Under the pieces are notes generated by a model. It saw nothing but the letters and a program-made list of their open reading frames with translations, searched no databases and was not told the origin of the DNA. A DNA stretch of 64,000 nucleotides from Cyanophora paradoxa CCMP329 (taxonomy: Eukaryota; Plantae; Glaucophyta). The translations under genes and the position numbers were made by a program. This document shows, piece after piece, positions 14,097 to 59,595 of this stretch (position 1 is its first letter; the number at the start of each line of letters is the position of its first letter). The stretch lies in assembly GCA_004431415.1 (NCBI GenBank), contig QPMI01000250.1, positions 1 to 64,000 on the forward strand. Reading direction: 5' to 3'.

Positions 14097-14118
14097 CCTT
14101 TCCCAAAGGCCGACCCTG

Positions 14119-14168
14119 GAGAGAGAGAGAGAGAATGCAGTAGACACAACCCCTAAACCCTAACCCTT
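14119..14168 (-). repeat. (TC)n-tailed repeat 3' end abutting an interstitial telomeric tract
   Basis: (GA)n-AATGCAGTAGACACA matches 51384-51409 and 58228-58256, and is followed by CCCCTAAACCCTAACCCT. Confidence 0.65.
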
Positions 14169-14292
14169 GTGTCCATATGCTGGTTTTTTTCACTCTGTGG
14201 TCGCATTGCTCCTTCCTAGGGCCTCGAGCTCGTGGTGGAACGGCCGACCCTTCAGCGGGAGAAGGAAAGAACCACACGCATTCTACGGCATA

Positions 14293-27196: not shown

Positions 27197-27914
27197 ATTA
27201 GGTCACCCAGTTCCTTCCACTTCAACTCCCCCCCCCCCCCCCCCCCCCCCCCCCCTTCAAGCACTCCACATCTCACTTGACAATACATTTGAAGTCCGAT
27301 TGCGAAGTCCGCGCGCAACAGGGTGGGCGGGTGGGAGTGAGAGCATGTCATGAAGTGCACTTGCTGCGGCAACTTCCTGTGGCCCCAGCCCACCGGCAAG
27401 CTGGCCAGCCGGGCCCTGCGTGGCCCCCTTACTGCAGTTAGGAGAGTAATGCACCTCAGATCTGGATCCGGATCATTGGATCCCCGCAGACACTTCAGCT
27501 AGCTAGCTACAGCTGCAGGTGCCCGAACGGCAAGTGTGGCATCGGGTCACGGGCCGGGTCGACATCTTGTGGCGGCAGGGGTCGACGTCGTCTCCGGGCG
27601 GTGGCGGGAGCCGGGCCGGCCGGGCCCTTGTGGGCTCTCAGGCCTAGGCTCTGGCCTCGCCTGGGGCGCGCCGGCCTCGAGAGGCCTTGCAAACTTTGCA
27701 TCGCGATCGAAAGCAGACCGTACGTGTCTGGAGCCGTGGCTGCTGCCCGTGGTGGGCTGGGCCCGCGGCAAAGGCGGCAGCAGTGTACTAGCACATCCCA
27801 CCCTTGAAGGCCGCCTCCAAATGCTTGCCTCCCCCTAATTCAACAGTATCTCTGATTTGGCAATGCATGGACACAATCTAAAAAACTGTGCTACAGAACA
27901 CAATTTGTGTATCA

Positions 27915-42064: not shown

Positions 42065-42446
42065 AAAATCCTTTTTCATACTTTTACATGCGAACAGTGT
42101 GTGCTAACACGCCCAGAGAGTGGTTCCAGGGGGCTGAGCCGGCCTATCCACAGTTCAGCAGCGCGGCACCACCTCCTTGGTTGGCGGAACAGGAACAGGC
42201 CTAGGGGACCAGCTGCCAGCCTTTCAACTTCGTGTTGAGGGCGCCGGCACGCAGGAAGGCTGCGTTCAGGCGCAGAGGTGCTCTGCCTCGACCTGCCTTC
42301 GATATCAGAGCCTCTTCTATTGCTGCAGGCGGGGCGAGTGGCGTGAATTTTGGTGCAAATGGCCCCAACTGCCTGGAAAAGGGCAAAAAGGTCGGGAAAA
42401 GGTGCCAAAAGGAAATGCTCAGTGGTTAGTGCCCAGAACATGAAAA

Positions 42447-42528
42447 TGAGCAGGACGGGATTTGAACCCGCGCCTCCGGGGAGATTGGTGCCTAAAACCA
42501 ACGCCTTAGACCACTCGGCCACCTGCTC
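42447..42528 (-). tRNA. trnL: tRNA-Leu(UAG)
   Basis: GAGCAGG/CCTGCTC-A acceptor stem, A box TGGCCGAGTGG, anticodon loop TTTAGGC, long variable arm, B box GGTTCAAATCC, TTTT terminator. Confidence 0.95.
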
Positions 42529-42620
42529 GAGGCAGGATGCCTTTGTGGGGCTTGTCACAGTACCACCCTCCTATAACTCCACTGCTCCTTACACATCTTC
42601 AGGCTTCCTTTCCGTCTCTT

Positions 42621-42667
42621 ATTGGTGCATTCTCTTCTAACTCCTTAGACCACTCGGCCATCTGCTC
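42621..42667 (-). pseudogene. Degenerate 5' half of tRNA-Leu
   Basis: GAGCAGATGGCCGAGTGGTCTAAGG..GCACCAAT with scrambled anticodon and no T arm. The copy in the right arm (~59240-59256) has an internal deletion. Confidence 0.7.
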
Positions 42668-42868
42668 AAGTGGGGCTGGACTGGGGGCACTACCCCACAC
42701 CACACCACACCACACCACACCACACCACACCACACCACACCACACAACATCAAGCACCTACCCTGCAGCTGGGTCCTCCTGGAAAATCTACGTTAGGCAA
42801 TTGCACTGTTCCCCACCGCCCCCGATCGCGAAGGGCCACCTCAAGCCCCCCTGCCTCCCCCTCCATCA

Positions 42869-42911
42869 CAACTGGCTTGGGCGTGTCTTATACATACTCT
42901 TCTTCTTCTTC
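42869..42911 (+). mobile_element. Family A LINE, ~40-bp 3' terminal fragment
   Basis: CAACTGGCTTGGGCGTGTCTTATACATACTC(TTC)n flanked by TCCATCA (42862-42868 / 42910-42916). Confidence 0.8.
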
Positions 42912-42985
42912 CATCAGTGCCGCAGTCCCTGCCCGCACCAAGGCCAACAATGGCCCCATGGCCAGCGGCCCTCCATGTCCATGCC

Positions 42986-43428
42986 TGGATCATGGTGATA
43001 ACATTCCTGGTGTCCCACCTCAGGTTTCTTTCAAACGCTTGCGGCCTTCACCTCCCCCAACTTTCCCATCCGCTGCCCCTATGGATCTCGCTGATGACCC
43101 AGGTTCCCCAATGGTGCTTATCTCTGACGAAGAGGCTGATGACATGACTGATGGCTGAAGGTTTCACACGTGAGGTCGTGACCAGGACTCCCCCAGGCCG
43201 GCATTAGGAAGAGGCCCGCATTGGGATGTCTGTGGTTGCTTTCCGTGTCTGCGTGTATGAGCGCCGGACCGCCGGGGCATACATGGCAGACCGTAAGGCG
43301 TTTGCGCCGCCACTACCCTTGTCTGGTTGGTTCACTGTCGATTGTGCTTCGGGCCTTCGGGTCCTTCGCCTCTTGTCAAAACCGCACAACCGGCTTGGGC
43401 GTGTCTTATACATACTCTTCTTCTTCTT
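42986..43428 (+). mobile_element. Family A LINE, 5'-truncated copy (~440 bp)
   Basis: Matches ORF2 C-terminus and 3' UTR of the long copies, ends in (TTC)n, TSD CCTCCATGTCCATGCC (42970-42985 / 43429-43444). Confidence 0.93.
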
Positions 43429-44276
43429 CCTCCATGTCCATGCCAAGGCCAGAAGGGGCGAATGCCCAGCCCGCCCCGAGGCACCTCCCTGCCCCACCCA
43501 AGCGTACCCCCCTGCCGCGGGCGCCCTTCTAGCGAGGATTCTCTGCCTTCGACGCACCTAAATGCACCTGGTTCGTGTTCTATGCATCATTCTCTACTAC
43601 TGCCCTGCTTTGCGGCCACCACATTCGAATCTCCACCACCTATCGGTTGTTCTCTGCCTGCGGGCGCTTCCTTGTTGTCAATCTGCCTTCGGGCACAATA
43701 CGCTTGTTGTCCATCTGCCTTCGGGCACAATCTCTGATAGCGGCGACCGTGCCCATTGGTTTCCCGCCACTTCCGTCGACCGTCCCTTAGCGTCTCGCCC
43801 ATGCCATGTTATTGCTTTTGTCCTTCAGCTGCTCTTGTAGCTCATCCATCTCCTGCGCAGTGCGTACAATCCTCATGCCTCCCAGGCGTGCTCCCGCGCC
43901 CCAGGCGTCTGATGGCGCACCTTCTGCGGACGTCGGCACACCTTTATGCACCTGCTTCGTGCCATATGCATCCGCCTGCTTCTTCGTTATGCCCGGCGGG
44001 CGCCTTGTCACTTTCCTTGTCGCCGTTTGGTTGTCGTCTGCCTTCGGACGCTTCTCTCTGACGAATCTGTCTTCGGGCACAAGACTCTTCACGCTTGCTG
44101 AATTTCCGATCCCGGCAGCCGCACCCGCTGGTCTCCCGCCACTGGCGTTGGCCGTATTCTGCTCCTGCCTCGTACACGCAGCGCCAGCTATGCTCCGTTC
44201 ATGTGCAGTGCTTATCATGACATGTGCAGGGCGTCCGCTTCTGCTTGGTCTGCTCTTGTGGCTTTCTCGCCTTTGC

Positions 44277-47200
44277 GAAGAAGAAGAGTATGTATAAGAC
44301 ACGCCCGAGCCGGTTGTGCGGTTTTGACGAAAGGCGAAGGACCCGAAGGCCCGAAGCACAATCGACAGTGAACCAACCAGACAAGGGTAGTGGCGGCGCA
44401 AACGCCTTACGGTCTACCATGTATGCCCCGGCGGTCCGGCGCTCATACACGCAGACACGGAAAGCAACCACAGACATCCCAATGCGGGCCTCTTCCTAAT
44501 GCCGGCCTGGGGGAGTCCTGGTCACGACCTCACGTGTGAAACCTTCAGCCATCAGTCATGTCATCAGCCTCTTCGTCAGAGATAAGCACCATTGGGGAAC
44601 CTGGGTCATCAGCGAGATCCATAGGGGCAGCGGATGGGAGAGTTGGAGGAGGTGAAGGCCGCAAGCGTTTGAAAGAAACCTGAGGTGGGACACCAGGAAT
44701 GTTATCACCATGATCCAGAGCACCAGGGTCTGGAGAAGACATTCGACGACGCTTAGGCGGGACAATAGAAGGAGAAAGAGGATCAGTATCCATGGGCGTC
44801 ATAGGCGCAGAAGAAGGCAGAGGGGCAGAAGAGGGAGGAGCTAGGGAAGCAATGACAGCATGACTCGCGAAGTCGGGCTCAACATCAACAGCGTCGATTC
44901 GGATAGGAGAGATCGGCAGCAGATCAGGGGCAAGCTCAGTGTCATCCACATAGATGATAACTTGAGGAGAGGGCGGAGGTGAACCTGTATCATCTATAGC
45001 AGCATCAAGACCAAACGCTGAAGCACCAACACGACGGCGTTGAAGAGGCGGCTCATCCTCCGAGTCAATATCGGGCGGCGGGTGAGGTGGCAGCGGGTGA
45101 GGGGGTGAGTGAACCACAGGACCAGGGTCAGGGGCAGGGTCGGGTCCACCAGGGGGGTCGTCATCATCTGATGAGGTACTACTGGAGGAATCATCAGGAT
45201 CATCAGGGCCAAGGTCGGAAAGGTCAGAGGAGTCTGAGCCGTTGTCAGGAGGGGACATATAGCCTTCAAGATCCTCCTTTTCAAGACGCTGCAGCAGGAC
45301 AGGCCGCACACTGGCATAAGGAAACTGAGCCACAAGGGGGCTAGGGGCTAGATCGGGGCTAGGGGCAGGCTGAGCAATATGTTCACAGTGCTCATAAGAG
45401 GCTAGGGAATGGTCATAAGCACGCGCAGCGTCTAAAAGATTAGCGTAGAATGAAGAATGAGAGGGGTCAGCAGTAGAGATGAAACGGAAATACCCACGGA
45501 CATAGGTGACTTTAAATCGAGGTAAACGACGAGGAAGCATGTCCATAAAATCGTCCAGTTCGCGGAACAAGGCAGCCATCAGAGTAGCGGCCTTCAAGCC
45601 CGTCTTGGAGGAAGGTGTAAGGGGCAGCTGTGTGTTAGGGTCCATTGCAAACGTAGCCGCAGCTTCAGTGCGACCTGCTCGATAGGCCAGACAATACGAG
45701 CGGAAAATGACGTGCAATCCAAGAATCCGAACAACCTGCCACTCCCAGTTCTGCAAGAACATCCAGCTGTCAGCAAAACGGACCGAGCCAGTAAGCAACC
45801 AGGCAACAAAGCGAGCGGAAGGAATGGGCATCGGCTGGAGCTGCAGGGCATGGAAGATGAGCGACCAGAACTGCTGCACAACAGGGCAGAGGACGAAAAC
45901 GTGCAGTGCATTGCAGCGCCGGTGGCAGACCGGGCATAGCGAGGAGAGGAGCTCACTGTCAAGCAAATTTGCCGAAGCAGGACGCTGAATATCAGAGCGC
46001 GCAGCCATATCAGCGATGCGGGACGATGTGCGAAGAGCGTTGTAGCGCAGTGCAAAGTAGCCGTCAAGGACGCGCTGCGTGAGAGCGTAGCGGAGGTCGG
46101 GAATCACTGTGTTGAACCAGGGAAAGCGATCAGTGCGCGCATCGTAGCCCGGCGGCCAGAGGAACTTTGGGGAGAGATCAGCACGCCACTTAGTCTCAGC
46201 GGTCGTCGGCGCCATGAAAGCGTGGGACGAGAGATACTTGTACACGTCGTGAACCGTGAAACGCGACGGGGCAGCAGGCAGCTTGTACGCAACCGACTTA
46301 GAGAGGCGCAGCTCTTCCTTTGAGCGATCATTGATGTTCTCGCGGTCAGAGTGGAACGCAAACGTACGGGAAGACGACGGTGGCAGCGGACGGAGTGCAA
46401 GGTCGGAAAGCTGTAACGAGTTCATGAGGAACCGGACGAGTGCAGGCATGGGGGACAACTTGCAAGCATTCTTAACAAGGCTAAGCGCATGTGCAGGCAC
46501 GGGAATGAAGTCGATCGCACGGGCCGCGGGCCGGATCGCAAGTACATCGGGGAGGGCAACGGGACTGTCAAGCGAAGCACTGCAAGGCACGTCAATCTCA
46601 TGGAAAGCGAGCTGTGTGTCAGGAAGAAGGCGAACGCGACAGAGAGCTACTCCCTGAAGTGAGACGCGTTCAGCAGCAAGTTTCGAGAAAGGGCCAATAG
46701 CGAGACCTCCAGGTTCGTGTTTCCAGTCTACAGTGCGACCACAGCGCCAAACCTCTTGCGCAAGTCGATTATTGAGCGCATGCAGCTGGTCGCGCAGTTG
46801 CTCGGGATAGGAGGGCTCAACATAGAGAGTATGTTCCCAGAGAAGTCCCAGATTTGATAGTTAAAACGGAAGCCGAGACGGAAGAGCAACGTGAAAGTGA
46901 AATCACGCTCATAGTACGTGTCTTTCTTATACCAGGGGTGCATGATCGGCATACGCAGGAAATCCCAGGCGCAGCGGGGCCTCCTGACATCGAAGATAGT
47001 CCGCCAGGCTTCGAAGATGGCAAAGAACGGGTCAGCAGGCGGAGGCCACAATGGCTTCACCAAGCGATCAGTTCTGTTGAGAAAAGGAAGCCAGAGCCCA
47101 AAGCCACCGTTTTCCGTGAACGCCTCAATAATTTCTCGACCAGGAAGAGATGCCGGGGAAGCAAGCCACGATTCCAAAGAGTTTGCGGCAAAGGCCAGCT

Positions 47201-50200
47201 GGAAGTGTTCGGGGGAGGGCGCTCCGAGACCGCCGAGAGATACAGGTCGACACGAAGCAGTGGTCATGCCCTGATGAGGTAAGATGAACGCATCGGAATT
47301 TGAAGAACGTTTCCAGACAAAGGTCTGTAAATTCTTTGAAATAGCCCGGAGGATCTTAGGAGGTGCTGGAACCGCACGGATATAAAAGCTTAAGACCCCC
47401 TGACAAAAAGCATAGGCGATGCGACCCCGTCCAAGAAGGGACGACTGGAAATCGACAGCTGTCTCCATAAAGAAGGTCGCTTTATGCTGAATCATGTTCC
47501 AAGACGGATGGTGCTCGCGATCAAGAAGGAGCTGATGAGGGAAACCGAGCTGCTTATGACAAGCAGGATCAAGCTCAGCGACGCGGAGAACAGGGAATGG
47601 CAAGGGATCGGACGGATCGAAATCCAATGGTGAGGCAGCCGGTTCCCTTAGAACAATAGCAAGAGATTTCTCGATAGAGAGATGTTGACCAGAGAGTGGT
47701 TTGAAAGAGGCAAAACGTGCGTGGATAGCTAAGAGAGAGTCACGTAGAGAGAGCCCCTGGGCGCGGAGCAGGAATAGCTGATAAATATCGTCAGCAAACT
47801 GGACAAGGGGGGTGCCAACAGGGCGGGGTATATCAGTGAGTGAGAGCAAGAGAGAACGTAGAGGGCTGATCGAGAGAATGAAGGAAACTGGGCTCCAGGG
47901 ACCACCTTGAATGGTGCCCACAAGACGTGAGAACACAGAAGAGAATAGCCCATTCGCAAATACACGTGCACGGAGGGGAGCTCGAGGGTTGTACAGACAG
48001 TGGTGCATTCTTCGGATAAGCCAGGGCCATTGTTGCACATGGAGAACGAGCGCCATAATAACCCAAAGCAACAGATCGTAGGCAGACTTAAGATCAGAGT
48101 CAAACCCGATAACACAGTCATAATTGGCGTAGCGGATGCGTGTATACGTTGCCAGCACTGCAAAGACATTTTTATGAACGTCCCGACCTTGTACGAAACC
48201 GAACTGATCTTCAGGAATGATGAGTTGTAAGATCGGATTGGCTACTGTGACCATAGTCCGTTCGAACAAGCGCAAGAGTGTGTTAGAAACTCCAATAGGT
48301 CGGTATTTCGAAGCATCAGTGGGCAAGCCTGACCGCTTCCAGATGAAAGTGTATGTCAAGTCGCGCATAAAGTCAGGGAGGAAGCCTTGAACAGTGATCT
48401 TTTGAAAGTAGGCAGCCAGGAAAAAAGACCAGGGCTTTGTGTGCATCTTAAAAATGCCAACGGGAATTCCATCAGGACCTGGTGCCCCATGGGCATACGC
48501 TTTACTGATAGAGAACGCTACGTCGTCAGGCGAGATATTAGTCTGAGTGCGCCAAACAGGCGGGACAATCCCCTGAACGTGGGGCAAGATATCGTCCACA
48601 AATTGTTGAATGAAAGCAGCAGCGGAGGGATTATCTGGAGACGCCGGAAGGGGGATATCAACAGTAGGGTCCTCGGGGGGTTCAGGAGGGGGGCAGAGAG
48701 CGTCAAGGATAGAGGTCTGAGTCAACAGGAAAGCAGGGGTAGGAGCGCCCAGTTCTACAAGCTTTCTAGCCAAATAGTTCGCAACCGCGCCAGGCTCAAC
48801 AGTGATAGCAGTGGGACCATCCGAGCTGAAGTGCAGCGGCGGGGGGACAATGGAGGAGGGCTTGGCGAGCCGCGCCCAGTCGCGCTTAGAGCCGCTTTCG
48901 AATGTAAGTCGGTGCTGAAGCCTGGCAAGCTGACGATTGCTGAGAGAGACCTTCTTCTGAAGTTCGCGCAGGGATTCAAGCCGCTGGGTGCGCTCGCGGT
49001 ACAGCGCGACAGCATCGGAGCCGGGCGGCAAGCGGTAGATCTTCATTTCAACGTCGCCCAGCGCTTTGTACGCCGCGCGCTCATGCGTGTAAAGCTTGCT
49101 AATCACGTGCGCTCTGTGCTTACGCGCCATCTTGCAGAGTCGCTTACAGAATGCGCGCCAAGTATCGTCGAAGACAGCAGCATCCGTAACTACCTCGCCT
49201 TCACCACGCGCTTGAATGATAGTGTCCAGGAATTGGGTCAAGTGCGTTTCCGTGCGCTTGCGCAGAGCAGGGTCGAGGCAGACTGGATCGCCGCGCTGAG
49301 AATACTGTCCGGGCAGGTTGCTGACGAAATCATACGGGAACGCTTGCACGCGGGACCGGGGCAAATGACGGTGCACACGAGGGCCTGAAAAGGAGAGAAC
49401 AAGAATGCGGTGGTCCAGCTGAAGATGGAGTGCATCGGATGGCGCTAGGAGCGAGTAAGTGGCAAGGCGACGCTGGAACCACTTGGTTGCAAGAGCAAAG
49501 TCGAGGCGCGAGTTTACAGCTTTAAGGCTAACAATTCGTGAATAAGTTGGGGCAAAAGCTGAAGCAGTTCCGCCGGCAGGAGGCGGTGGAGCATGGTTCG
49601 CAAGATCATCAAGCTGGTGGGAAGTCATCGTTGTGTGAAGGTACGAGCGCTGCAGGGAATTAGGCTTCGGGGTGCGGTGATTCCAGTCTCCGATCAGAAG
49701 CATAGGCACAGTAGCGGAGAGATACCCAGCCTGCACACAAGATTGCCACCATTCACGGCGGTCCCTGTTATCACTAGCAGGGGCATAGACGCAAGCCAAG
49801 AGTACGGTCGTAGCAGGGAAGGAACCCGACGCCTTGTACGCAACAGAGACCGAAATAAAACGTCCATCAGAGTCCTGACGAGCAAGTGTAACCTCGTGCT
49901 GTGCAGCAAAGAAGGGCGTGACCATTATGGCAACACCAGTGGAGCGGGATTGAGTAGGAGCAGAGTGGAAGAACGGGCCTCGCCAGGCAGCTGCAATCTT
50001 CTCAAGTTTTCCCAAAGGGTGACCAGCGTCATCAAATTCCCGTAACTTAGTTTCCTGTAAGCAGAGGATGTCTATCTTGTGAGCAACGGCAAACTTCCTG
50101 CAACGTTCCACAAAGTTCTGCAGCTTGCTGGGACTATTGAGCCCGCCCACATTTAATGATGCAATGTTAACCAAACTTAATCAGGCCATGGCGGTGCACG

Positions 50201-50252
50201 AAGGCGGTGAATGTGGGGCAGCGGGGCAATCCCAGCAATGAAGGGAAATGCA
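44277..50252 (-). mobile_element. Family A non-LTR retrotransposon copy 1 (L1/Tx1-like), 5'-truncated in the leader
   Basis: (TTC)n tail at 44277; near-identical to copy 2 until 50252; no exact TSD found. Confidence 0.95.
44545..50174 (-). CDS. ORF2: APE endonuclease - reverse transcriptase - CCHC finger - acidic Pro-rich tail (~1,870 codons if the 1-nt indel near 46837 is corrected)
   Basis: APE: SLNVGGLN, LCLQET, LIGDWN, SRLDF, LDHR. RT: APGPDGIP, YRPIGV, DLKSAYD, GTIQGGPWSP, QFADD. CPVCHRRCNALHVFVLCP. Copy 2 has the extra C that restores the frame. Confidence 0.92.
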
Positions 50253-50659
50253 CCCTGCCTTCGCATCTGCAGCTTTGCTACTCTTTGTCCGACCCATCCT
50301 CTCTTCCTCTTTGCTTCACTTGTCCGACCCATCCTCTCTTCCTATTTGCCTTTCTTTTTGGATCTTGATTCGTCTCTAAATCTCAATTCATTTTCGTGTG
50401 TGTTTCCTTTCGTGTCTGCTGCCATGCTTTTGTTTTAGCTTGCACTGAACACGCCCGTTCACCCCATTTCCTTCAATTGCCTGGCCCATCAGTCTGTTGC
50501 TGGTTCTTCCTCTCGTGGCCATCACTCTGCTTCTCCACTGTGTAAGCTAGGCCGTTTTCGATGAGAGCTATACCATGATTGCATGGATGATGATGGTGCT
50601 GTCTTGTGATTCAATTGCGCTTGAACCTGCCTCTGTTTCAATTTTGTGGGTAGCCATCC

Positions 50660-51007
50660 TCAATACCCCGGGCGGCTCGATAGGGAGCGGGTCGTTCCGG
50701 GATTCGGGGTTTTCCATGGCGGGGACCCTGTGGGTCTCTGCATGGTTGCTCTCCCTTTGCTCTTTTGGCGCAGGGGCTTCGGCCCCTGCCCCTAGCGGTG
50801 CGTACGCACAACACTACCTGTGCCAGGAAGGTCCCTGGCGTGCCTTGCACGTCCCTTTCGGGGCCTCTGCGGCGCTGCTATACCTTGTCACCCTGGTCCA
50901 CGGGCGTGTCTTTTGCTTCATCTCTCTCTCTTCCCTGCCCCACCCCCCTGCAATGCCTTATATTCACCCCAGTCCACGGGCGTGTCTTTTGCTTCATCTC
51001 TCTCTTT
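50660..51007 (+). mobile_element. Family B (TC)n-tailed retroelement 3' region plus a duplicated 3' tip
   Basis: Ends GGGCGTGTCTTTTGCTTCA(TC)n twice (~50902-50930 and ~50972-51007); patchy similarity to 58367-58620 and to the family A 3' UTR. Confidence 0.6.
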
Positions 51008-51230
51008 GTATTTAGACCATTCGGCCATGCATGTGCTCATCAAGCACTGCAGCTGTGAGCATGTCGCTCAACCTGCCCCTAGGCCTAGGCCTGGCCCTGA
51101 TCTAGCTCCTAGTCCCCTTGTTGCCCAGTTGCCCCCTCTCCCTTCCCCCACGCCCCCACCGCCCCAAGCCGCGGCATGCATATGGGCCCGCCTGCAGGTC
51201 TCTCCAACCCGGCTGCCGGGGCCGGGCCAG

Positions 51231-54200
51231 CTCAAACCAGCGCCGCCCCTGCCCCCGCTCCCGCCCCCGCCCGCGCTGCCAAGATCAAGAACCCCAACTG
51301 TGACTGTGGAATTCCAATGCGGGTGAAGCCTGTCAGGTTCGCCCCCCAGCCCCCCCCCCCCCCCCCCCCCCCCCCACCCCCACGAGAGAGAGAGAAATGC
51401 AGTAGACACATCCACGCCAGCCCCCACCCCCAGCCTTAGAAGAAGAAGAGTATGTATAAGACACGCCCAAGCCGGTTGTGCAGTTTTGACGAAAGGCGAA
51501 GGACCCGAAGGCCCGAAGCACAATCGACAGTGAACCAACCAGACAAGGGTAGTGGCGGCGCAAACGCCTTACGGTCTACCATGTATGCCCCGGCGGTCCG
51601 GCGCTCATACACGCAGACACGGAAAGCAACCACAGACATCCCAATGCGGGCCTCTTCCTAATGCCGGCCTGGGGGAGTCCTGGTCACGACCTCACGTGTG
51701 AAACCTTCAGCCATCAGTCATGTCATCAGCCTCTTCGTCAGAGATAAGCACCATTGGGGAACCTGGGTCATCAGCGAGATCCATAGGGGCAGCGGATGGG
51801 AGAGTTGGAGGAGGTGAAGGCCGCAAGCGTTTGAAAGAAACCTGAGGTGGGACACCAGGAATGTTATCACCATGATCCAGAGCACCAGGGTCTGGAGAAG
51901 ACATTCGACGACGCTTAGGCGGGACAATAGAAGGAGAAAGAGGATCAGTATCCATGGGCGTCATAGGCGCAGAAGAAGGCAGAGGGGCAGAAGAGGGAGG
52001 AGCTAGGGAAGCAATGACAGCATGACTCGCGAAGTCGGGCTCAACATCAACAGCGTCGATTCGGATAGGAGAGATCGGCAGCAGATCAGGGGCAAGCTCA
52101 GTGTCATCCACATAGATGATAACTTGAGGAGAGGGCGGAGGTGAACCTGTATCATCTATAGCAGCATCAAGACCAAACGCTGAAGCACCAACACGACGGC
52201 GTTGAAGAGGCGGCTCATCCTCCGAGTCAATATCGGGCGGCGGGTGAGGTGGCAGCGGGTGAGGGGGTGAGTGAACCACAGGACCAGGGTCAGGGGCAGG
52301 GTCGGGTCCACCAGGGGGTCGTCATCATCTGATGAGGTACTACTGGAGGAATCATCAGGATCACCAGGGCCAAGGTCGGAAAGGTCAGAGGAGTCTGAGC
52401 CGTTGTCAGGAGGGACATATAGCCTTCAAGATCCTCCTTTTCAAGACGCTGCAGCAGGACAGGCCGCACACTGGCATAAGGAAACTGAGCCACAAGGGGG
52501 CTAGGGGCTAGATCGGGGCTAGGGGCAGGCTGAGCAATATGTTCACAGTGCTCATAAGAGGCTAGGGAATGGTCATAAGCACGCGCAGCGTCTAAAAGAT
52601 TAGCGTAGAATGAAGAATGAGAGGGGTCAGCAGTAGAGATGAAACGGAAATACCCACGGACATAGGTGACTTTAAATCGAGGTAAACGACGAGGAAGCAT
52701 GTCCATAAAATCGTCCAGTTCGCGGAACAAGGCAGCCATCAGAGTAGCGGCCTTCAAGCCCGTCTTGGAGGAAGGTGTAAGGGGCAGCTGTGTGTTAGGG
52801 TCCATTGCAAACGTAGCCGCAGCTTCAGTGCGACCTGCTCGATAGGCCAGACAATACGAGCGGAAAATGACGTGCAATCCAAGAATCCGAACAACCTGCC
52901 ACTCCCAGTTCTGCAAGAACATCCAGCTGTCAGCAAAACGGACCGAGCCAGTAAGCAACCAGGCAACAAAGCGAGCGGAAGGAATGGGCATCGGCTGGAG
53001 CTGCAGGGCATGGAAGATGAGCGACCAGAACTGCTGCACAACAGGGCAGAGGACGAAAACGTGCAGTGCATTGCAGCGCCGGTGGCAGACCGGGCATAGC
53101 GAGGAGAGGAGCTCACTGTCAAGCAAATTTGCCGAAGCAGGACGCTGAATATCAGAGCGCGCAGCCATATCAGCGATGCGGGACGATGTGCGAAGAGCGT
53201 TGTAGCGCAGTGCAAAGTAGCCGTCAAGGACGCGCTGCGTGAGAGCGTAGCGGAGGTCGGGAATCACCGTGTTAAACCAGGGAAAGCGATCAGTGCGCGC
53301 ATCGTAGCCCGGCGGCCAGAGGAACTTTGGGGAGAGATCAGCACGCCACTTAGTCTCAGCGGTCGTCGGCGCCATGAAAGCGTGGGAGGAAAGGTACTTG
53401 TACACGTCGTGAACCGTGAAACGCGACGGGGCAGCAGGCAGCTTGTACGCAACCGACTTAGAGAGGCGCAGCTCTTCCTTTGAGCGATCATTGATGTTCT
53501 CGCGGTCAGAGTAGAACGCAAACGTACGGGAAGACGACGGTGGCAGCGGACGGAGTGCAAGGTCGGAAAGCTGTAACGAGTTCATGAGGAACCGGACGAG
53601 TGCAGGCATGGGGGACAACTTGCAAGCATTCTTAACAAGGCTAAGCGCATGTGCAGGCACGGGAATGAAGTCGATCGCACGGGCCGCGGGCCGGATCGCA
53701 AGTACATCGGGAGGGCAACGGGACTGTCAAGCGAAGCACTGCAAGGCACGTCAATCTCATGGAAAGCGAGCTGTGTGTCAGGAAGAAGGCGAACGCGACA
53801 GAGAGCTACTCCCTGAAGTGAGACGCGTTCAGCAGCAAGTTTCGAGAAAGGGCCAATAGCGAGACCTCCAGGTTCGTGTTTCCAGTCTGCAGTGCGACCA
53901 CAGCGCCAAACCTCTTGCGCAAGTCGATTATTGAGCGCATGCAGCTGGTCGCGCAGTTGCTCGGGATAGGAGGGCTCGACATAGAGAGTATGTTCCCCAG
54001 AGAAGTCCCAGATTTGGTAGTTAAAACGGAAGCCGAGACGGAAGAGCAACGTGAAAGTGAAATCACGCTCATAGTACGTGTCTTTCTTATACCAGGGGTG
54101 CATGATTGGCATACGCAGGAAATCCCAGGCGCAGCGGGGCCTCCTGACATCGAAGATAGTCCGCCAGGCTTCGAAGATGGCAAAGAACGGGTCAGCAGGC

Positions 54201-57200
54201 GGAGGCCACAATGGCTTCACCAAGCGATCAGTCCTGTTGAGAAAAGGAAGCCAGAGCCCAAAGCCACCGTTTTCCGTGAACGCCTCAATAATTTCTCGAC
54301 CAGGAAGAGATGCCGGGGAAGCAAGCCACGATTCCAAAGAGTTTGCGGCAAAGGCCAGCTGGAAGTGTTCGGGGGAGGGCGCTCCGAGACCGCCGAGAGA
54401 TACAGGTCGACACGAAGCAGTGGTCATGCCCTGATGAGGTAAGATGAACGCATCGGAATTTGAAGAACGTTTCCAGACAAAGGTCTGTAAATTCTTTGAA
54501 ATAGCCCGGAGGATCTTAGGAGGTGCTGGAACCGCACGGATATAAAAGCTTAAGACCCCTGACAAAAAGCATAGGCGATGCGACCCCGTCCAAGAAGGGA
54601 CGACTGGAAATCGACAGCTGTCTCCATAAAGAAGGTCGCTTTATGCTGAATCATGTTCCAAGACGGATGGTGCTCGCGATCAAGAAGGAGCTGATGAGGG
54701 AAACCGAGCTGCTTATGACAAGCAGGATCAAGCTCAGCGACGCGGAGAACAGGGAATGGCAAGGGATCGGACGGATCGAAATCCAATGGTGAGGCAGCCG
54801 GTTCCCTTAGAACAATAGCAAGAGATTTCTCGATAGAGAGATGTTGACCAGAGAGTGGTTTGAAAGAGGCAAAACGTGCGTGGATAGCTAAGAGAGAGTC
54901 ACGTAGAGAGAGCCCCTGGGCGCGGAGCAGGAATAGCTGATAAATATCGTCAGCAAACTGGACAAGGGGGTGCCAACAGGGCGGGGTATATCAGTGAGTG
55001 AGAGCAAGAGAGAACGTAGAGGGCTGATCGAGAGAATGAAGGAAACTGGGCTCCAGGGACCACCTTGAATGGTGCCCACAAGACGTGAGAACACAGAAGA
55101 GAATAGCCCATTCGCAAATACACGTGCACGGAGGGGAGCTCGAGGGTTGTACAGACAGTGGTGCATTCTTCGGATAAGCCAGGGCCATTGTTGCACATGG
55201 AGAACGAGCGCCATAATAACCCAAAGCAACAGATCGTAGGCAGACTTAAGATCAGAGTCAAACCCGATAACACAGTCATAATTGGCGTAGCGGATGCGTG
55301 TATACGTTGCCAGCACTGCAAAGACATTTTTATGAACGTCCCGACCTTGTACGAAACCGAACTGATCTTCAGGAATGATGAGTTGTAAGATCGGATTGGC
55401 TACTGTGACCATAGTCCGTTCGAACAAGCGCAAGAGTGTGTTAGAAACTCCAATAGGTCGGTATTTCGAAGCATCAGTGGGCAAGCCTGACCGCTTCCAG
55501 ATGAAAGTGTATGTCAAGTCGCGCATAAAGTCAGGGAGGAAGCCTTGAACAGCGATCTTTTGAAAGTAGGCAGCCAGGAAAACAGACCAGGGCTTTGTGT
55601 GCATCTTAAAAATGCCAACGGGAATTCCATCAGGACCTGGTGCCCCATGGGCATACGCTTTACTAATAGAGAACGCTACGTCGTCAGGAGAGATATTAGT
55701 CTGAGTGCGCCAAACAGGCCCTGAGGCGGGACAATCCCCTGAACATGGGGCAAGATATCGTCCACAAATTGTTGAATGAAAGCAGCAGCGGAGGGATTAT
55801 CCGGAGACGCCGGAAGGAGGATATCAACAGTAGGGTCCTCGGGGGGTTCAGGAGGGGGGCAGAGAGCGTCGAGGATAGAGGTCTGAGTCAACAGGAAAGC
55901 AGGGGTAGGAGCGCCCAGTTCTACAAGCTTTCTAGCCAAATAGTTCGCAACCGCGCCAGGCTCAACAGTGATAACAGTGGGACCATCCGAGGTGAAGTGC
56001 AGCGGCGGGGGGACAATGGAGGAGGGCTTGGCGAGCCGCGCCCAGTCACGCTTAGAGCCGCTTTCGAATGTAAGCCGGTGCTGAAGCCTGGCAAGCTGAC
56101 GATTGCTGAGAGAGACCTTCTTCTGAAGTTCGCGCAGGGATTCAAGCCGCTGGGTGCGCTCGCGGTACAGCGCGACAGCATCGGAGCCGGGCGGCAAGCG
56201 GTAGATCTTCATTTCAACGTCGCCCAGCGCTTTGTACGCCGCGCGCTCATGCGTATAGAGCTTGCTTATCACATGTGCTCTGTGCTTACGCGCCATCTTG
56301 CAGAGCCGCTTGGAGAACGAGCGCCATGTGTCATCGAAGACAGCAGCATCCGTAACTACCTCGCCTTCACCACGCGCTTGAATGATAGTGTCCAGAAATT
56401 GGGTCAAGTGCGTTTCCGTGCGCTTGCGCAGAGCAGGGTCGAGGCAGACTGGATCGCCGCGCTGAGAATACTGTCCGGGCAGGTTGCTGACGAAATCATA
56501 CGGGAACGCTTGCACGCGGGACCGGGGCAAATGACGGTGCACACGAGGGCCTGAAAAGGAGAGAACAAGAATGCGGTGGTCCAGCTGAAGATGGAGTGCA
56601 TCGGATGGCGCTAGGAGCGAGTAAGTGGCAAGGCGACGCTGGAACCACTTGGTTGCAAGAGCAAAGTCGAGGCGCGAGTTTACAGCTTTAAGGCTAACAA
56701 TTCGTGAATAAGTTGGGGCAAAAGCTGAGGCAGTTCCGCCGGCAGGAGGCGGTGGAGCATGGTTCGCAAGATCATCAAGCTGGTGGGAAGTCATCGTTGT
56801 GTGAAGGTACGAGCGCTGCAGGGAATTAGGCTTCGGGGTGCGGTGATTCCAGTCTCCGATCAGAAGCATAGGCACAGTAGCGGAGAGATACCCAGCCTGC
56901 ACACAAGATTGCCACCATTCACGGCGGTCCCTGTTATCACTAGCAGGGGCATAGACACAAGCCAAGAGTACGGTCGTAGCAGGGAAGGAACCCGACGCCT
57001 TGTACGCAACAGAGACCGAAATAAAACGTCCATCAGAGTCCTGACGAGCAAGTGTAACCTCGTGCTGTGCAGCAAAGAAGGGCGTGACCATTATGGCAAC
57101 ACCAGTGGAGCGGGATTGAGTAGGAGCAGAGTGGAAGAACGGGCCTCGCCAGGCAGCTGCAATCTTTTCAAGTTTTCCCAAAGGGTGACCAGCGTCATCA

Positions 57201-58048
57201 AATTCCCGTAACTTAGTTTCCTGTAAGCAGAGGATGTCTATCTTGTGAGCAACGGCAAACTTCCTGCAACGTTCCACAAAGTTCTGCAGCTTGCTGGGAC
57301 TATTGAGCCCGCCCACATTTAATGATGCAATGTTAACCAAACTTAATCAGGCCATGGCGGTGCACGAAGGCGGTGAATGTGGGGCAGCGGGGCAATCCCA
57401 GCAATGAAGGGAAATGCAATGCTCTCCAGATGAAAGCCGAGGACCCGAGAGCTTAGCCCGGCATCAGCTTCGAGAAGGACTGAGTGCGCAGCTAGCACGG
57501 CAGCAGCTCCGAGAAGTACGATCCGAGTAACGGTAACTGGCCGCGTCGACGTCTGCACATGGCGAGAGCTGAGCCGGGCGTACGCATGACATAGAATGTA
57601 CCGAGCTTGTGTGCGACAGGAGCTGGAGGCGGGAGCACAGCTGCCGGATGACGCCGCGCGGACGTCAAAGACGAAGAGCATGTTGGTGGACAGGAGTCTC
57701 GCGAATCCGGCTGCCGCAAGGAGTTCAAGGCAGCGCGCACGGGAATGCGCAGGCAAAGCGACAGGGATAGGTGCCCGAAGGACAGGAATAGGTGCCTCGC
57801 GGCAGATTGCAGGTGCCCAAGGGCAGGAGAGTCTCAGAACGACGCATAAGACAAGGATAAGTGCGCACCACGCTCCGCGCTGCTGCTGCTGTGCTGTTGC
57901 GTGCCTCGCCAGCAAGTTACCTAGACTCTCTCAGAGTCCGACGGTCTGAGAGCCCCACACTCAGTGACTGTTTCCCGGGTCCGACGGTCCTTCGAATTCG
58001 AAGGCTTCCAGCCTTACCTCTCGAGCTCAAATCAAGAAGGAGGGCCCA
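51231..58048 (+). pseudogene. GRF-type zinc-finger gene fragment split by LINE copy 2 in its poly-C intron
   Basis: 51231-51437 and 58008-58048 are the reverse complement of contiguous parts of 58840-59060. Confidence 0.75.
51439..58007 (-). mobile_element. Family A non-LTR retrotransposon copy 2, longest copy (~6.57 kb)
   Basis: TSD CCAGCCTTA (51430-51438 / 58008-58016) and (TTC)n tail. ORF2 at 51707-57340 is broken by an 8-bp insertion (~55720) and several homopolymer indels. Confidence 0.95.
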
Positions 58049-58127
58049 TGAACGAAGTAGGAAGCCCCCTGAAATACGTCGTTCATGAACACTAACTACA
58101 ATCCAGTCTCTTCTTGTAGGCAACCTA

Positions 58128-58176
58128 AAGAAGAGTATGTATAAGACAGCCTCCGGAGGAAGAAGAAGAAGAGTAT
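58128..58176 (-). mobile_element. Two tiny family A 3'-tip insertions
   Basis: AAAGAAGAGTATGTATAAGACA (58128-58148); (GAA)nGAGTAT (58161-58176) flanked by AGCCWCCGGAGGA. Confidence 0.6.
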
Positions 58177-58227
58177 AGCCACCGGAGGAGGCTACGTAAA
58201 AAAAAAGCTACCCCGTGCCCGAGGAGG

Positions 58228-58620
58228 GAGAGAGAGAGAGAAATGCAGTAGACACATCCACGCCAGCAAGACTGGGTATATAACTGCACTTTTTGACATT
58301 TGACCACTTCTGCCCAAAGTCCTACCCAAACTTTGGCCCCGAATGGGACGTGCAAGGCCCGTCAGGAGAGAGAGAGAGCAAGTAAAAGACACGCCCACGC
58401 CAGCAAGACTGGGTATGACAGAACCGCAGAGGCCCCTAAAGGAGCTTGCAAGGCCCGTCAGGGACCCACTAGCGTGGGGAGTGAGTGGAGCCATGTACAG
58501 GACCCTGGGCCACCACCCCCAGGGCGCCAGCAGAATGAAAAGGCAACCCATGTGGACACCCGACGGCGCCACATAGGAAGAGCCTGAATCCCCGTGACAG
58601 CCCGCTCCCTGTCGGGCATT
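58228..58620 (-). mobile_element. Two tandem family B (TC)n-tailed units
   Basis: (GA)n..GACACRYCCACGCCAGCAAGACTGGGTAT..TGCAAGGCCCGTCAGG at 58228-58366 and 58367-58462+. Confidence 0.65.
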
Positions 58621-58719
58621 CTCAAGCTCGTGGTATATGTCGGCCCTGAGGGGGGTGGTCAGCGCGCACGCTCGTGGCCTAGACTAGGACTAGGACTAGG
58701 ACTAGGGGACTAGGGTGGA

Positions 58720-58914
58720 CTAGGGGCTCGCGGGGGGAGCTCGAGGGTGGGGGGTGAACCAGCCTAAGCACCAGGTGCATGCCTCGCGATCGGGCTCGCT
58801 GCGCAGGCTGCACATGAAGAAGGGTCGGTTTTGGTTCTGGCCCTCCTTCCTGATTTGAGCTCGAGAGGTAAGGCGGGGGTGGGGGTGGGGGTGGGGGGGG
58901 GGGGCGGGTGGGGG

Positions 58915-58945
<31 letters not shown>

Positions 58946-59060
58946 TGGGGGGCGAACCTGACAGGCTTCACCCGCATTGGAATTCCACAGTCACAGTTGG
59001 GGTTCTTGATCTTGGCAGCGCGGGCGGGGGCGGGAGCGGGGGCAGGGGCGGCGCTGGTTT
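58720..59060 (-). pseudogene. GRF-type zinc-finger gene 3' part (5' end lost to a LINE fragment)
   Basis: Splicing out the poly-C intron (GTTCGC..AATCAG) gives NPNCDCGIPMRVKPVRKEGQNQNRPFFMCSLRSEPDREACTWCLGW, the zf-GRF pattern. Confidence 0.7.
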
Positions 59061-59160
59061 GAAGAAGAAGAAGAGTATGTATAAGACACGCGTACGCCCA
59101 AGCTGGTTGTGTGGTTTTGACGAAAGGCGAAGGACCCGAAGGCCCGAAGCACAATCAACA
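59061..59160 (-). mobile_element. Family A LINE, 100-bp 3' fragment
   Basis: (GAA)nGAGTATGTATAAGACAC..GAAGCACAATC; joined directly to the tRNA upstream flank. Confidence 0.85.
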
Positions 59161-59348
59161 GCTTGATGTTGTGTGGTGTGGTGTGGTGTGATGTGGTGTG
59201 GTGTGGGGTGGTGCCCCCAGTCGACGTCCAGCCCCACTTGAGCAGAATGCACCAATAAGAGACGGAAAGGAAGCCTGAAGATGTGTAAGGAGCAGTGGAG
59301 TTATAGGAGGGTGGTAGTGTGACAAGCCCCACAAAGGCATCCTGCCTC

Positions 59349-59430
59349 GAGCAGGTGGCCGAGTGGTCTAAGGCGTTGGTTTTAGGCACCAATCTCCCCG
59401 GAGGCGCGGGTTCAAATCCCGTCCTGCTCA
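59349..59430 (+). tRNA. trnL: tRNA-Leu(UAG)
   Basis: Same 82-nt cloverleaf as 42447-42528, followed by TTTT. Confidence 0.95.
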
Positions 59431-59595
59431 TTTTCATGTTCTGGGCACTAACCACTGAGCATTTCCTTTTGGCACCTTTTCCCGACCTTTTTGCCCTTTT
59501 CCAGGCAGTTGGGGCCATTTGCATATCAGGGACTAACGTGTGCAACCCCCCCCCCCGGTATACGTCAATTCAAACTCGGCGGCAAATTTTTGAAC

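What the first reader, a model, noticed from the sequence alone, without database searches (positions are those of the whole stretch)
42354..59523. Retrotransposon island confined between two inverted, divergent tRNA-Leu genes: candidate tRNA-targeted integration system
Seen: identical tRNA-Leu(UAG) genes sit in ~0.4-kb inverted arms pointing outward. The ~16.4 kb between their 5' ends holds at least seven family A insertions (42869, 42986, 44277, 51439, 58128, 58161, 59061) and about five family B tips. No family A end occurs in the preceding 42 kb. Different TSDs (TCCATCA, CCTCCATGTCCATGCC, CCAGCCTTA, AGCCWCCGGAGGA) show independent insertions with no shared target sequence. Copies nearest each tRNA have their 5' ends facing the tRNA 5' end. 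Known: Dictyostelium TRE5, yeast Ty1/Ty3 and the Tx1-clade Dewa elements use tRNA-gene neighbourhoods as safe havens in compact genomes. Inference: an independent Pol III-guided, position-specific rather than sequence-specific, targeting system in an alga.
Basis: partly seen in the sequence, partly recalled or inferred. Interest (0 to 1): 0.82.

Follow-up and report, generated by a model that had tools for sequence, protein, structure and literature searches.

The report
LINE nest between two tRNA-Leu genes
About a dozen insertions from two related jumping-gene (LINE) families are packed between two back-to-back copies of a leucine tRNA gene near a chromosome end of an alga; the clustering is real, but one locus cannot show that the tRNA genes attract the elements.

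Summary
Two identical tRNA-Leu(UAG) genes (42447-42528 minus, 59349-59430 plus) lie in about 0.4-kb inverted arms with their 5' ends facing inward. Between them are seven copies or tips of a (TTC)n-tailed non-LTR retrotransposon, family A. A has an APE endonuclease, a reverse transcriptase and an L1-type CCHC motif, is 6.57 kb full length, and has an ORF2 of about 1,878 aa. Five copies of a related (TC)n-tailed family B are also there. Four A insertions have different target-site duplications, so they are independent and not sequence-specific. Without family A, the tRNA 5' ends are only 3.6 kb apart, and every family A end in the 64-kb window falls there.

The A copies nearest the tRNAs have the orientation of Dictyostelium TRE5, but they sit 183-410 bp upstream, not at one fixed distance. 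The youngest long copies are furthest from the tRNAs. One B-type insertion lies 28 kb from any tRNA. The inner end of the right arm coincides with a LINE 5' end that has no duplication, which suggests a rearrangement.

No other copy of either family could be fetched, so the genome-wide test could not be run. I put Pol III-guided targeting at about 0.3. This is a new, orphan LINE family in a glaucophyte, probably Cyanophora paradoxa.

The parts
42447..42528 (-). tRNA-Leu(UAG), left copy, transcribed toward the telomere
   Evidence: ARAGORN; Rfam RF00005 61.6 bits
59349..59430 (+). tRNA-Leu(UAG), right copy, identical sequence, transcribed away from the island
42354..42759 (.). Left inverted arm: 93 bp downstream flank, the tRNA, about 230 bp upstream flank including (CCACA)11 and a 32-bp partial copy of the tRNA 5' part at 42639-42670
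59161..59523 (.). Right inverted arm. Its inner end is the 5' end of family A copy A_R.
   Evidence: note s1-524997
42869..42909 (+). Family A, 41-bp 5'-truncated copy with (TTC)n tail; TSD TCCATCA at 42862-42868 and 42910-42916; 341 bp upstream of the left tRNA, in opposite orientation
42986..43428 (+). Family A, 443-bp 5'-truncated copy; 16-bp TSD at 42970-42985 and 43429-43444; 98.4% identical to A1 and A2
44277..50252 (-). Family A copy A1, 5,976 bp, truncated 72 bp upstream of ORF2; no clear TSD
44548..50180 (-). ORF2 of A1, about 1,878 aa. It is read as two open frames, 50180-46731 and 46860-44548, joined by a 1-bp homopolymer difference at 46839. Content: APE endonuclease, RT with FADD, a CX2CX7HX4C motif, and an acidic, Pro-rich tail.
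51439..58007 (-). Family A copy A2, full length at 6,569 bp; TSD CCAGCCTTA at 51430-51438 and 58008-58016; 99% identical to A1; several 1-bp homopolymer frameshifts; about 660-nt leader upstream of ORF2
58128..58148 (-). Family A tip 1, about 20 bp; no clear TSD
58161..58176 (-). Family A tip 2, 16 bp, mostly tail; 13-bp TSD at 58148-58160 and 58177-58189 with 1 mismatch
59061..59165 (-). Family A copy A_R, 105 bp, about 90% identical to A1/A2 (CpG transitions plus a 6-bp insertion); no TSD; 5' end 183 bp upstream of the right tRNA; tail directly abuts the next element
58365..59060 (-). Family B copy B-b, about 0.7 kb, (TC)n tail, 3' motif GGGCGTGTCTT shared with family A. Its 5' 205 bp recur at 51232-51438 plus 58017-58056, which is the site where A2 inserted.
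58227..58364 (-). Family B copy B-a, 138 bp, (TC)n tail; head-to-tail with B-b
51384..51420 (-). Family B-a tip, 37 bp; TSD CCCCCAC at 51377-51383 and 51421-51427
50675..50931 (+). Family B copy, 66% identical to the B-b 3' region, (TC)n tail
50946..51005 (+). Family B tip. Its (TC)n tail ends 6 nt before the tRNA-derived fragment at 51012-51027.
51012..51027 (+). tRNA-derived fragment (D-arm region, antisense, 15 of 16 nt) in the middle of the island
   Evidence: 4 matches in the window against 0.03 expected
14118..14241 (-). B-type insertion outside the island: 124 bp, TSD GGCCGACCCT at 14108 and 14242. It contains a telomere-like stretch joined to a B-a tip with a (CT)8 tail. There is no tRNA within 28 kb.

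Best explanation
The island is a genuine nest built by repeated target-primed reverse transcription of a previously undescribed L1-like LINE, family A (APE endonuclease, RT, CCHC motif, (TTC)n tail), and of related (TC)n-tailed elements, family B. The two families share the 3' motif GGGCGTGTCTT, so the same enzyme probably moves both.

Shown:
- The elements landed in what was a spacer of at most 3.6 kb upstream of a tRNA-Leu locus.
- The insertions are independent and are not aimed at one sequence.
- They are far more clustered than chance allows.

Inferred: the clustering most likely reflects a regional preference, combined with tolerance of insertions there. The spacer and the growing nest would be a permissive chromatin or neutral patch that feeds on itself. 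The element would not be reading the Pol III machinery directly.

On this reading the tRNA pair marks the edges because one tRNA-bearing 0.4-kb unit was duplicated in inverted orientation. This possibly happened during the LINE insertion whose 5' end now forms the inner boundary of the right arm.
For: LINE identity:
- Pfam finds Exo_endo_phos (1e-11) and RVT_1 (2e-11).
- The best solved relative is human L1 ORF2p, at 1e-14 against 5e-6 for R2.
- A CX2CX7HX4C motif is present, and the Atlas features point to zf-RVT.
- Copies show variable 5' truncation, microsatellite tails and four different TSDs.

Clustering: all 6 matches to the 17-mer and all 7 exact GGGCGTGTCTT motifs lie in the island. 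P is 2e-4 or lower.

Evidence against a strict tRNA cue:
- Insertion distances are 183, 341 and about 410 bp and then further in.
- The youngest copies, A1 and A2 (99% identical), are the furthest from the tRNAs.
- A B-type insert with a TSD lies 28 kb from any tRNA.
- Another note reports (TTC)n-tailed mini-insertions on a different piece of this genome (s1-570252; context unknown).

Evidence for a rearrangement:
- Arm homology stops exactly at the 5' end of A_R, which has no TSD, and does not resume beyond it.
- The arms differ by about 0.4% in substitutions. That is no older than the A1/A2 pair.
Against: - tRNA genes are rare in this genome. I infer about 60 from the statement that 3 genes are about 5% (PMC13578239). 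A chance meeting of a nest with a tRNA locus is therefore unlikely for any one nest.
- The window holds four tRNA-Leu-derived sequences, two of them the flanking genes themselves. One fragment abuts a B tail.
- The tRNA-proximal A copies have the TRE5 orientation, and nothing lies downstream of either tRNA.
- Selection alone does not easily explain why even 16-450-bp tips are absent from the 36 kb of intron-rich DNA to the left.
- No marker of a chromatin cue was tested.
Confidence: 0.42

Rival explanations
1. Pol III-guided, position-specific targeting. Family A, and family B riding on it, is tethered to the tRNA transcription complex or its upstream chromatin. It integrates in a broad upstream window with its 5' end toward the gene. 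The window would be like that of yeast Ty1 and the orientation like that of Dictyostelium TRE5.
For: - All 7 A events and 5 of the 6 B events in the window lie upstream of the two divergent tRNA-Leu genes, and none lies downstream.
- The non-A spacer is only 3.6 kb, so every A event was at most about 1.8 kb from a tRNA 5' end when it happened.
- The three copies nearest the tRNAs are in the opposite transcriptional orientation, as TRE5 is (PMC5911963).
- The TSDs differ, so no sequence-specific site is involved.
- There are extra tRNA-derived fragments at 42645-42660 (left arm) and 51012-51027 (island). The second lies 6 nt after a B tail.
- The domain order APE-RT-ZF in an L1-like element is the same as in TRE5-A.
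Against: - There is one locus only, and the two tRNAs are one duplicated unit.
- There is no common insertion distance, which is the published criterion.
- Known tRNA-targeting LINEs use windows of tens of bp.
- The young full-length copy is over 1 kb from either tRNA even after other insertions are removed.
- A1 points its 3' end at the nearer tRNA.
- A B-type insert lies 28 kb from any tRNA.
- No candidate tethering domain was identified. The C-terminal 764 aa has no relative among 1.84 billion proteins.
Confidence: 0.32
2. A single tRNA locus plus a LINE-mediated inverted duplication. Originally there was one tRNA-Leu gene with a nest on its upstream side. The second arm was created when the cDNA of copy A_R was joined to a copy of the arm, or by a later fold-back rearrangement. 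On this reading 'confined between two tRNAs' is a by-product. This can be combined with either reading above.
For: - The inner end of the right arm is exactly the 5' end of A_R. There is no TSD, and homology does not resume beyond A_R or the stacked B copies.
- The arms are as similar as the youngest LINE copies.
- An unverified note says the outer end of the right arm touches another transposon's end.
Against: - Gene conversion between tRNA copies could equally keep old arms identical.
- A deletion accompanying the insertion could erase the TSD.
- No mechanism for copying 0.4 kb in inverted orientation was demonstrated here.
Confidence: 0.3
3. Sequence-directed or microsatellite-directed insertion, as in the Tx1-clade elements Dewa (a site in the tRNA-Leu spacer), Koshi ((TTC)n) and Kibi ((TC)n), or self-nesting as in Zepp.
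For: - The tails are (TTC)n and (TC)n, the same repeats that Koshi and Kibi target (PMC4494074).
- Three of four TSDs begin with TCC or CCTCC, which gives 2-3 nt of pairing with the tail.
- The locus is a tRNA-Leu spacer, as for Dewa (PMC3706591).
Against: - The 5' junctions carry no microsatellite. Runs of (TTC)3 or more, or (GAA)3 or more, occur in the window only as element tails.
- The four TSDs share no site.
- No A copy interrupts another A copy.
Confidence: 0.04
4. Assembly artefact: the inverted arms or the tandem A1/A2 pair come from misassembly of long reads.
For: - Repeats that are 99% identical next to a telomere are hard to assemble.
- A2 carries six 1-bp homopolymer differences, typical of long-read error.
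Against: - The arms differ by 30-bp and 6-bp indels, a substitution and the microsatellite length.
- A1 and A2 have different 5' ends and flanks, 43 substitutions between them, and a perfect TSD around A2.
- The centre is 16 kb of non-palindromic sequence, unlike a missed-adapter palindrome.
Confidence: 0.03

Closest known systems
Dictyostelium TRE5-A (tRNA gene-targeted L1-clade LINE)
   Same: It is an APE-RT-zinc-finger LINE found upstream of tRNA genes in the opposite transcriptional orientation, with repeated hits at one tRNA locus (PMC5911963).
   Different: TRE5 inserts 44-54 bp upstream of many different tRNA genes and has an oligo(A) tail and an ORF1 that binds TFIIIB. Here the distances are 183 bp to kilobases, only one locus is known, the tail is (TTC)n, there is no convincing ORF1, and no sequence relationship closer than the general L1-like fold was found.
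Yeast Ty1 (broad window upstream of Pol III genes)
   Same: It uses a broad upstream window of up to about 1 kb, with no target sequence.
   Different: Ty1 is an LTR element that integrates with an integrase bound to Pol III subunit AC40. Family A is a target-primed LINE.
Tx1-clade site-specific LINEs: Dewa (tRNA-Leu spacer, zebrafish), Koshi ((TTC)n), Kibi ((TC)n)
   Same: These belong to the L1/Tx1 kind of LINE (from memory). Dewa sits in a tRNA-Leu spacer, and the Koshi and Kibi repeats match the tails of families A and B.
   Different: Those elements cut one defined sequence or microsatellite and are flanked by it on both sides. Family A has four unrelated TSDs and no microsatellite at its 5' junctions. 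Tx1 membership was not tested by phylogeny.
Zepp / ZeppL L1-like LINE clusters of green algae
   Same: L1-like LINEs of algae that pile up in one place on a chromosome, including near telomeres.
   Different: As I recall, Zepp copies nest inside one another and carry poly(A). Family A copies here are not inserted into family A sequence and carry (TTC)n.

Membership tests
Non-LTR (LINE) retrotransposon inserted by target-primed reverse transcription | Encodes APE-type endonuclease and reverse transcriptase | tested here: met
   Pfam PF03372 at 1e-11 and PF00078 at 2e-11. FADD and the APE catalytic motifs are visible in the translation.
Non-LTR (LINE) retrotransposon inserted by target-primed reverse transcription | Common 3' end with a simple-repeat tail, variable 5' truncation, variable TSDs | tested here: met
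   Copy lengths are 16, 20, 41, 105, 443, 5,976 and 6,569 bp, all sharing one 3' end. Four copies have TSDs of 7-16 bp.
L1 superfamily (L1/Tx1-like) | ORF2 with APE, RT and a C-terminal CCHC motif; RT closest to L1 | tested here: inconclusive
   The best PDB match is human L1 ORF2p. A CX2CX7HX4C motif is present. The Atlas features point to zf-RVT at a score of 0.90, which is weak. No phylogeny with named clade references was possible. The nearest database proteins are only 25-29% identical and unnamed.
tRNA-gene-targeted retroelements (TRE5-like) | Several copies at a similar distance from different tRNA genes (criterion of PMC5006619) | tested here: not met
   At this single locus the distances are 183, 341 and about 410 bp and then over 1 kb. 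Other tRNA genes could not be examined.
tRNA-gene-targeted retroelements (TRE5-like) | Fixed orientation relative to the tRNA gene (TRE5: opposite) | tested here: inconclusive
   The three tRNA-proximal A copies fit. Across all seven the pattern is ++-----, which has a chance of 0.06 for any single-switch pattern. A1 points its 3' end at the nearer tRNA.
tRNA-gene-targeted retroelements (TRE5-like) | Genome-wide enrichment next to Pol III genes | not testable with these tools
Collection scans gave 0. There are no protein relatives.
Tx1-type sequence-specific or microsatellite-specific LINEs (Dewa, Koshi, Kibi) | The same target sequence or microsatellite on both sides of every copy | tested here: not met
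   The four TSDs are unrelated, and the 5' junctions lack (TTC)n or (TC)n.
Zepp-like self-nesting clusters | Copies inserted into other copies of the same family | tested here: not met
   No A copy is interrupted by another A copy. A2 sits in a B-related sequence, and the others sit in spacer.

The most novel reading that the evidence does not exclude
Family A, with family B as its passenger, is a LINE of a glaucophyte alga that recognises the upstream neighbourhood of Pol III-transcribed tRNA genes. It would do so in a broad, orientation-specific window. That would be an independent origin of tRNA-gene targeting outside Amoebozoa and fungi, and as far as I could find the first such case in Archaeplastida. 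It would combine the geometry of TRE5 with the wide window of Ty1, and it would be carried by an ORF2 whose C-terminal 764 residues have no detectable relative.
Probability: 0.3. Interest if true: 0.7.

Novelty: new member of a known kind. Interest (0 to 1): 0.45.

Why it matters
Targeting of tRNA genes is the standard example of how retrotransposons survive in gene-dense genomes. For LINEs it is established only in social amoebae. A separate origin in a glaucophyte would show that the solution evolves repeatedly. It would also offer a new protein-to-Pol III tether to study.

Even without targeting, the locus is useful in three ways:
- It documents a young, nearly intact orphan LINE family. 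One full-length copy and one copy with a single frameshift differ by under 1%.
- It points to a probable LINE and passenger pair that share a 3' recognition motif.
- It holds a possible LINE-associated inverted duplication of a tRNA gene.

The decisive test is a simple genome-wide count on the existing assembly.

Tried and rejected
Searches for more copies, all empty:
- The family A 3' end found nothing in metagenome contigs or viral contigs.
- ORF2 as a protein probe found nothing in metagenome contigs.
- The tRNA sequence found nothing in prokaryote genome contigs.

Protein searches:
- The word search with ORF2 APE-RT gave 2 weak hits. Repeated on the RT region it gave 4 hits at 25-29% identity.
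- The C-terminal 681 aa gave none.
- The exhaustive HMMER search of the C-terminal 764 aa against 1.84 billion representatives gave none.
- The family is therefore absent from the protein collections, and flanks of other copies could not be fetched.

Earlier notes of this scan (8 look-ups) named the organism, a neighbouring DNA transposon and (TTC)n mini-insertions elsewhere. None reported tRNA context for this family.

Other negative results:
- Pfam on 10 ORFs at 59.5-64 kb gave nothing, so the neighbouring transposon is unconfirmed.
- Pfam on the 195-codon frame upstream of ORF2 in A2 gave nothing, and its translation does not look like a protein. I do not call it ORF1.
- Rfam at a permissive threshold found no further tRNA-like genes in the island.
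- RNA folds of the A and B 3' ends showed a stem before an unpaired GUGUCUU tail, but the z-score for A is only -1.4, so I make no claim.

Rejected readings: microsatellite targeting, a single sequence-specific site, self-nesting, and a missed-adapter palindrome artefact. Reasons are under Rival explanations.

I made no structure or complex prediction. There is no alignment for the orphan region, and no host TFIIIB or Pol III sequences were available.


Full report
**Setting.** The window begins with about 6.7 kb of (CCCTAA)n, so it is a chromosome end. Earlier notes of this scan take the genome to be the glaucophyte alga Cyanophora paradoxa; I did not test that. The contig is not human. The flagged island starts about 36 kb inside the telomere repeats.

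**The tRNA genes and arms.** ARAGORN and Rfam each find two tRNA genes in the 64 kb. They are tRNA-Leu(UAG) at 42447-42528 (-) and 59349-59430 (+), at 61.6 bits each. A permissive Rfam search of the island adds no others.
- The two genes are identical and transcribed outward, with their 5' ends facing each other 16.8 kb apart. Each is followed by a TTTT run.
- They lie in inverted arms. Segments 42354-42633 and 59244-59523 are 99.6-100% complementary over 280 nt. Homology continues through a (CCACA)n repeat to about 42759 and 59161.
- The arms differ by one substitution, a 30-bp indel, a 6-bp indel and the repeat number. That argues against one sequence having been assembled twice.
- The 30-bp difference is part of a 32-bp partial copy of the tRNA 5' part with its flank, at 42639-42670. 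Part of its flank is present in both arms, so I read the right arm as having lost 30 bp.

**Family A.** Self-comparison and junction reading give seven copies that share one 3' end and a (TTC)3-4 tail.

| Copy | Coordinates | Strand | Length | TSD |
|---|---|---|---|---|
| A-s1 | 42869-42909 | + | 41 bp | TCCATCA |
| A-s2 | 42986-43428 | + | 443 bp | 16 bp |
| A1 | 44277-50252 | - | 5,976 bp | none |
| A2 | 51439-58007 | - | 6,569 bp | CCAGCCTTA |
| tip 1 | 58128-58148 | - | about 20 bp | none clear |
| tip 2 | 58161-58176 | - | 16 bp | 13 bp, one mismatch |
| A_R | 59061-59165 | - | 105 bp | none |

- A1 and A2 are 99% identical: 43 substitutions, one 8-bp indel and six 1-bp homopolymer indels. 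They have different 5' ends and different flanks, so they are separate insertions and not a tandem duplication.
- A1 carries two overlapping open frames, 50180-46731 and 46860-44548. A single G in a homopolymer at 46839, present in A2, would join them into an ORF2 of about 1,878 aa. I searched the two pieces separately and did not join them.
- The first piece has an APE endonuclease and a reverse transcriptase. FADD and the nuclease motifs are intact. Its best solved relative is human L1 ORF2p.
- The second piece holds a CX2CX7HX4C motif and then about 300 acidic, proline-rich residues. Atlas features point weakly to zf-RVT.
- The second piece has no relative by word search and none in an exhaustive search of 1.84 billion representatives. 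The RT region finds only unnamed proteins at 25-29% identity.
- The 195-codon frame upstream of ORF2 in A2 has no family match and does not look like a protein.
- Family A is therefore a new, isolated, L1-like LINE lineage that was active very recently.

**Family B.** A second set of ends carries a (TC)n tail. They lie at 50675-50931 (+), about 50946-51005 (+), 51384-51420 (-, TSD CCCCCAC), 58227-58364 (-) and 58365-59060 (-).
- A and part of B share GGGCGTGTCTT just before the tail. All seven exact occurrences in the window are in the island, against 1.35 expected when one mismatch is allowed.
- The same reverse transcriptase probably recognises both families. B events are therefore not independent evidence about target choice.
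- One B-type tip lies outside the island. It is a 124-bp insert at 14118-14241 with a 10-bp TSD and no tRNA within 28 kb.

**Is the clustering more than chance?** Yes. Family A accounts for 13.2 of the 16.8 kb between the tRNA 5' ends, so the non-A spacer is 3.6 kb.
- The chance that 7 of 7 A events fall inside is 2e-4 if the whole present island is the target, and 2e-8 if the spacer is the target.
- With only the four events that have a TSD, the chances are still about 7e-3 and 5e-5 (my own arithmetic from the proportions).
- The rest of the window has no long transposon ORFs between 6.5 and 42.4 kb and almost no internal repeats.
- Purifying selection does not easily explain why even 16-450-bp tips are missing from the intron-rich DNA to the left. 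I therefore conclude that integration itself is regionally biased.

**Is the cue the tRNA gene?**

For:
- The nest is bounded by tRNA genes with their upstream sides facing inward.
- Nothing lies downstream of either tRNA.
- The three copies nearest the tRNAs, at 183, 341 and about 410 bp, are in the opposite transcriptional orientation. TRE5 has the same orientation, and it is also an L1-clade APE-RT-ZF element.
- The TSDs share no site.
- The window holds two further tRNA-derived fragments. One lies in the left arm. The other lies in the middle of the island, 6 nt after a B tail.
- tRNA genes seem rare in this genome. I infer about 60.

Against:
- This is one locus, and its two tRNAs are one duplicated unit.
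- The published criterion for active targeting is several copies at a similar distance from tRNA genes. Known tRNA-targeting LINEs use windows of tens of bp. Here there is no common distance.
- The youngest long copies are the furthest from the tRNAs, and A1 points its 3' end at the nearer tRNA.
- The orientation pattern ++----- has a chance of 0.06.
- A B-type insert sits far from any tRNA.
- Another note records (TTC)n-tailed mini-insertions elsewhere in the genome, context unknown.
- An unverified note says a giant DNA transposon also abuts the right arm. That would fit a general haven for transposons better than a family-specific tether. My Pfam scan of ORFs there found nothing.

**A complication: the right arm looks like a rearrangement product.**
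- Its homology with the left arm ends exactly at the 5' end of A_R. A_R has no TSD, and the left arm's continuation is found nowhere on the right.
- A_R, B-b and B-a are stacked head to tail, each tail touching the next element's 5' end with no TSD between them. This looks like template jumping or repeated hits at a junction.
- The arms are no more diverged than A1 and A2.
- The second tRNA copy may therefore have arisen with, or after, a LINE event. In that case 'confined between two tRNAs' is partly a by-product.

**Other readings.**
- Microsatellite or site-specific targeting, as in Koshi, Kibi and Dewa, is rejected. The 5' junctions lack the repeat and the TSDs differ. Only a weak TCC start is shared, which gives 2-3 nt of pairing with the tail.
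- Self-nesting is not seen.
- A palindrome artefact does not fit a 16-kb asymmetric centre.

**What could not be done.** The decisive test is the distance and orientation of all A and B ends relative to all Pol III genes, and it needs the rest of the genome. Four collection scans and five protein searches returned no other copy. The notes index gave no tRNA context for this family.

**Verdict.**
- The island is a real, non-random nest of a new L1-like LINE and its (TC)n-tailed relatives, upstream of a duplicated tRNA-Leu gene.
- A regional preference without direct reading of Pol III is my best explanation, at 0.42.
- Pol III-guided, broad-window targeting remains a serious rival, at about 0.3.
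- A LINE-associated inverted duplication of the tRNA arm, at about 0.3, is compatible with either.

Noticed in passing
window 14108-14251: A 124-bp retro-insert with a perfect 10-bp TSD (GGCCGACCCT). Read on the minus strand, it joins about 75 bp of unknown sequence, a telomere-like stretch (AGGGTTAGGGTTTAGGGG) and a family B-a tip with a (CT)8 tail. It may be a template-switch chimera that involved telomeric repeat RNA or DNA.
   Followed up: partly
window 58227-59165: Three elements (A_R, B-b, B-a) are stacked head to tail on the minus strand. Each tail directly touches the next element's 5' end, with no TSD between them. This suggests RT template jumping between LINE RNAs, or repeated insertion at a junction.
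   Followed up: partly
window 42639-42670 and 51012-51027: Two extra tRNA-Leu-derived fragments (D-arm region). The first includes 9 nt of the gene's own 5' flank, so it is a DNA-level partial duplication. The second lies 6 nt after a (TC)n tail. In both, a pyrimidine-rich tail-like stretch precedes the fragment. These may be old insertions into tRNA gene bodies.
   Followed up: partly
window 44548-45450 (ORF2 C-terminus): The last approximately 300 residues of ORF2 are acidic, Ser-rich and Pro-rich, with a KRRR motif. The whole C-terminal 764 aa has no relative among 1.84 billion representative proteins.
   Followed up: yes
window 49089-49167 vs 56255-56333: Twelve of the 43 substitutions between A1 and A2 fall within 80 bp. 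This suggests a mosaic or gene-conversion patch between subfamilies.
   Followed up: no
window 51342-51381 and 58875-58952: Long C and G homopolymer-rich tracts of 40 and 78 nt lie inside the 205-bp segment shared by two B-related copies. Similar G-rich runs occur at 12692-12724 and 27206-27255.
   Followed up: no
Ten ORFs there gave no Pfam match, and the far end lies outside the window.
   Followed up: partly
window 1-6689: A telomere array of (CCCTAA)n, about 6.7 kb, with occasional variant units. The island lies about 36 kb inside it.
   Followed up: yes
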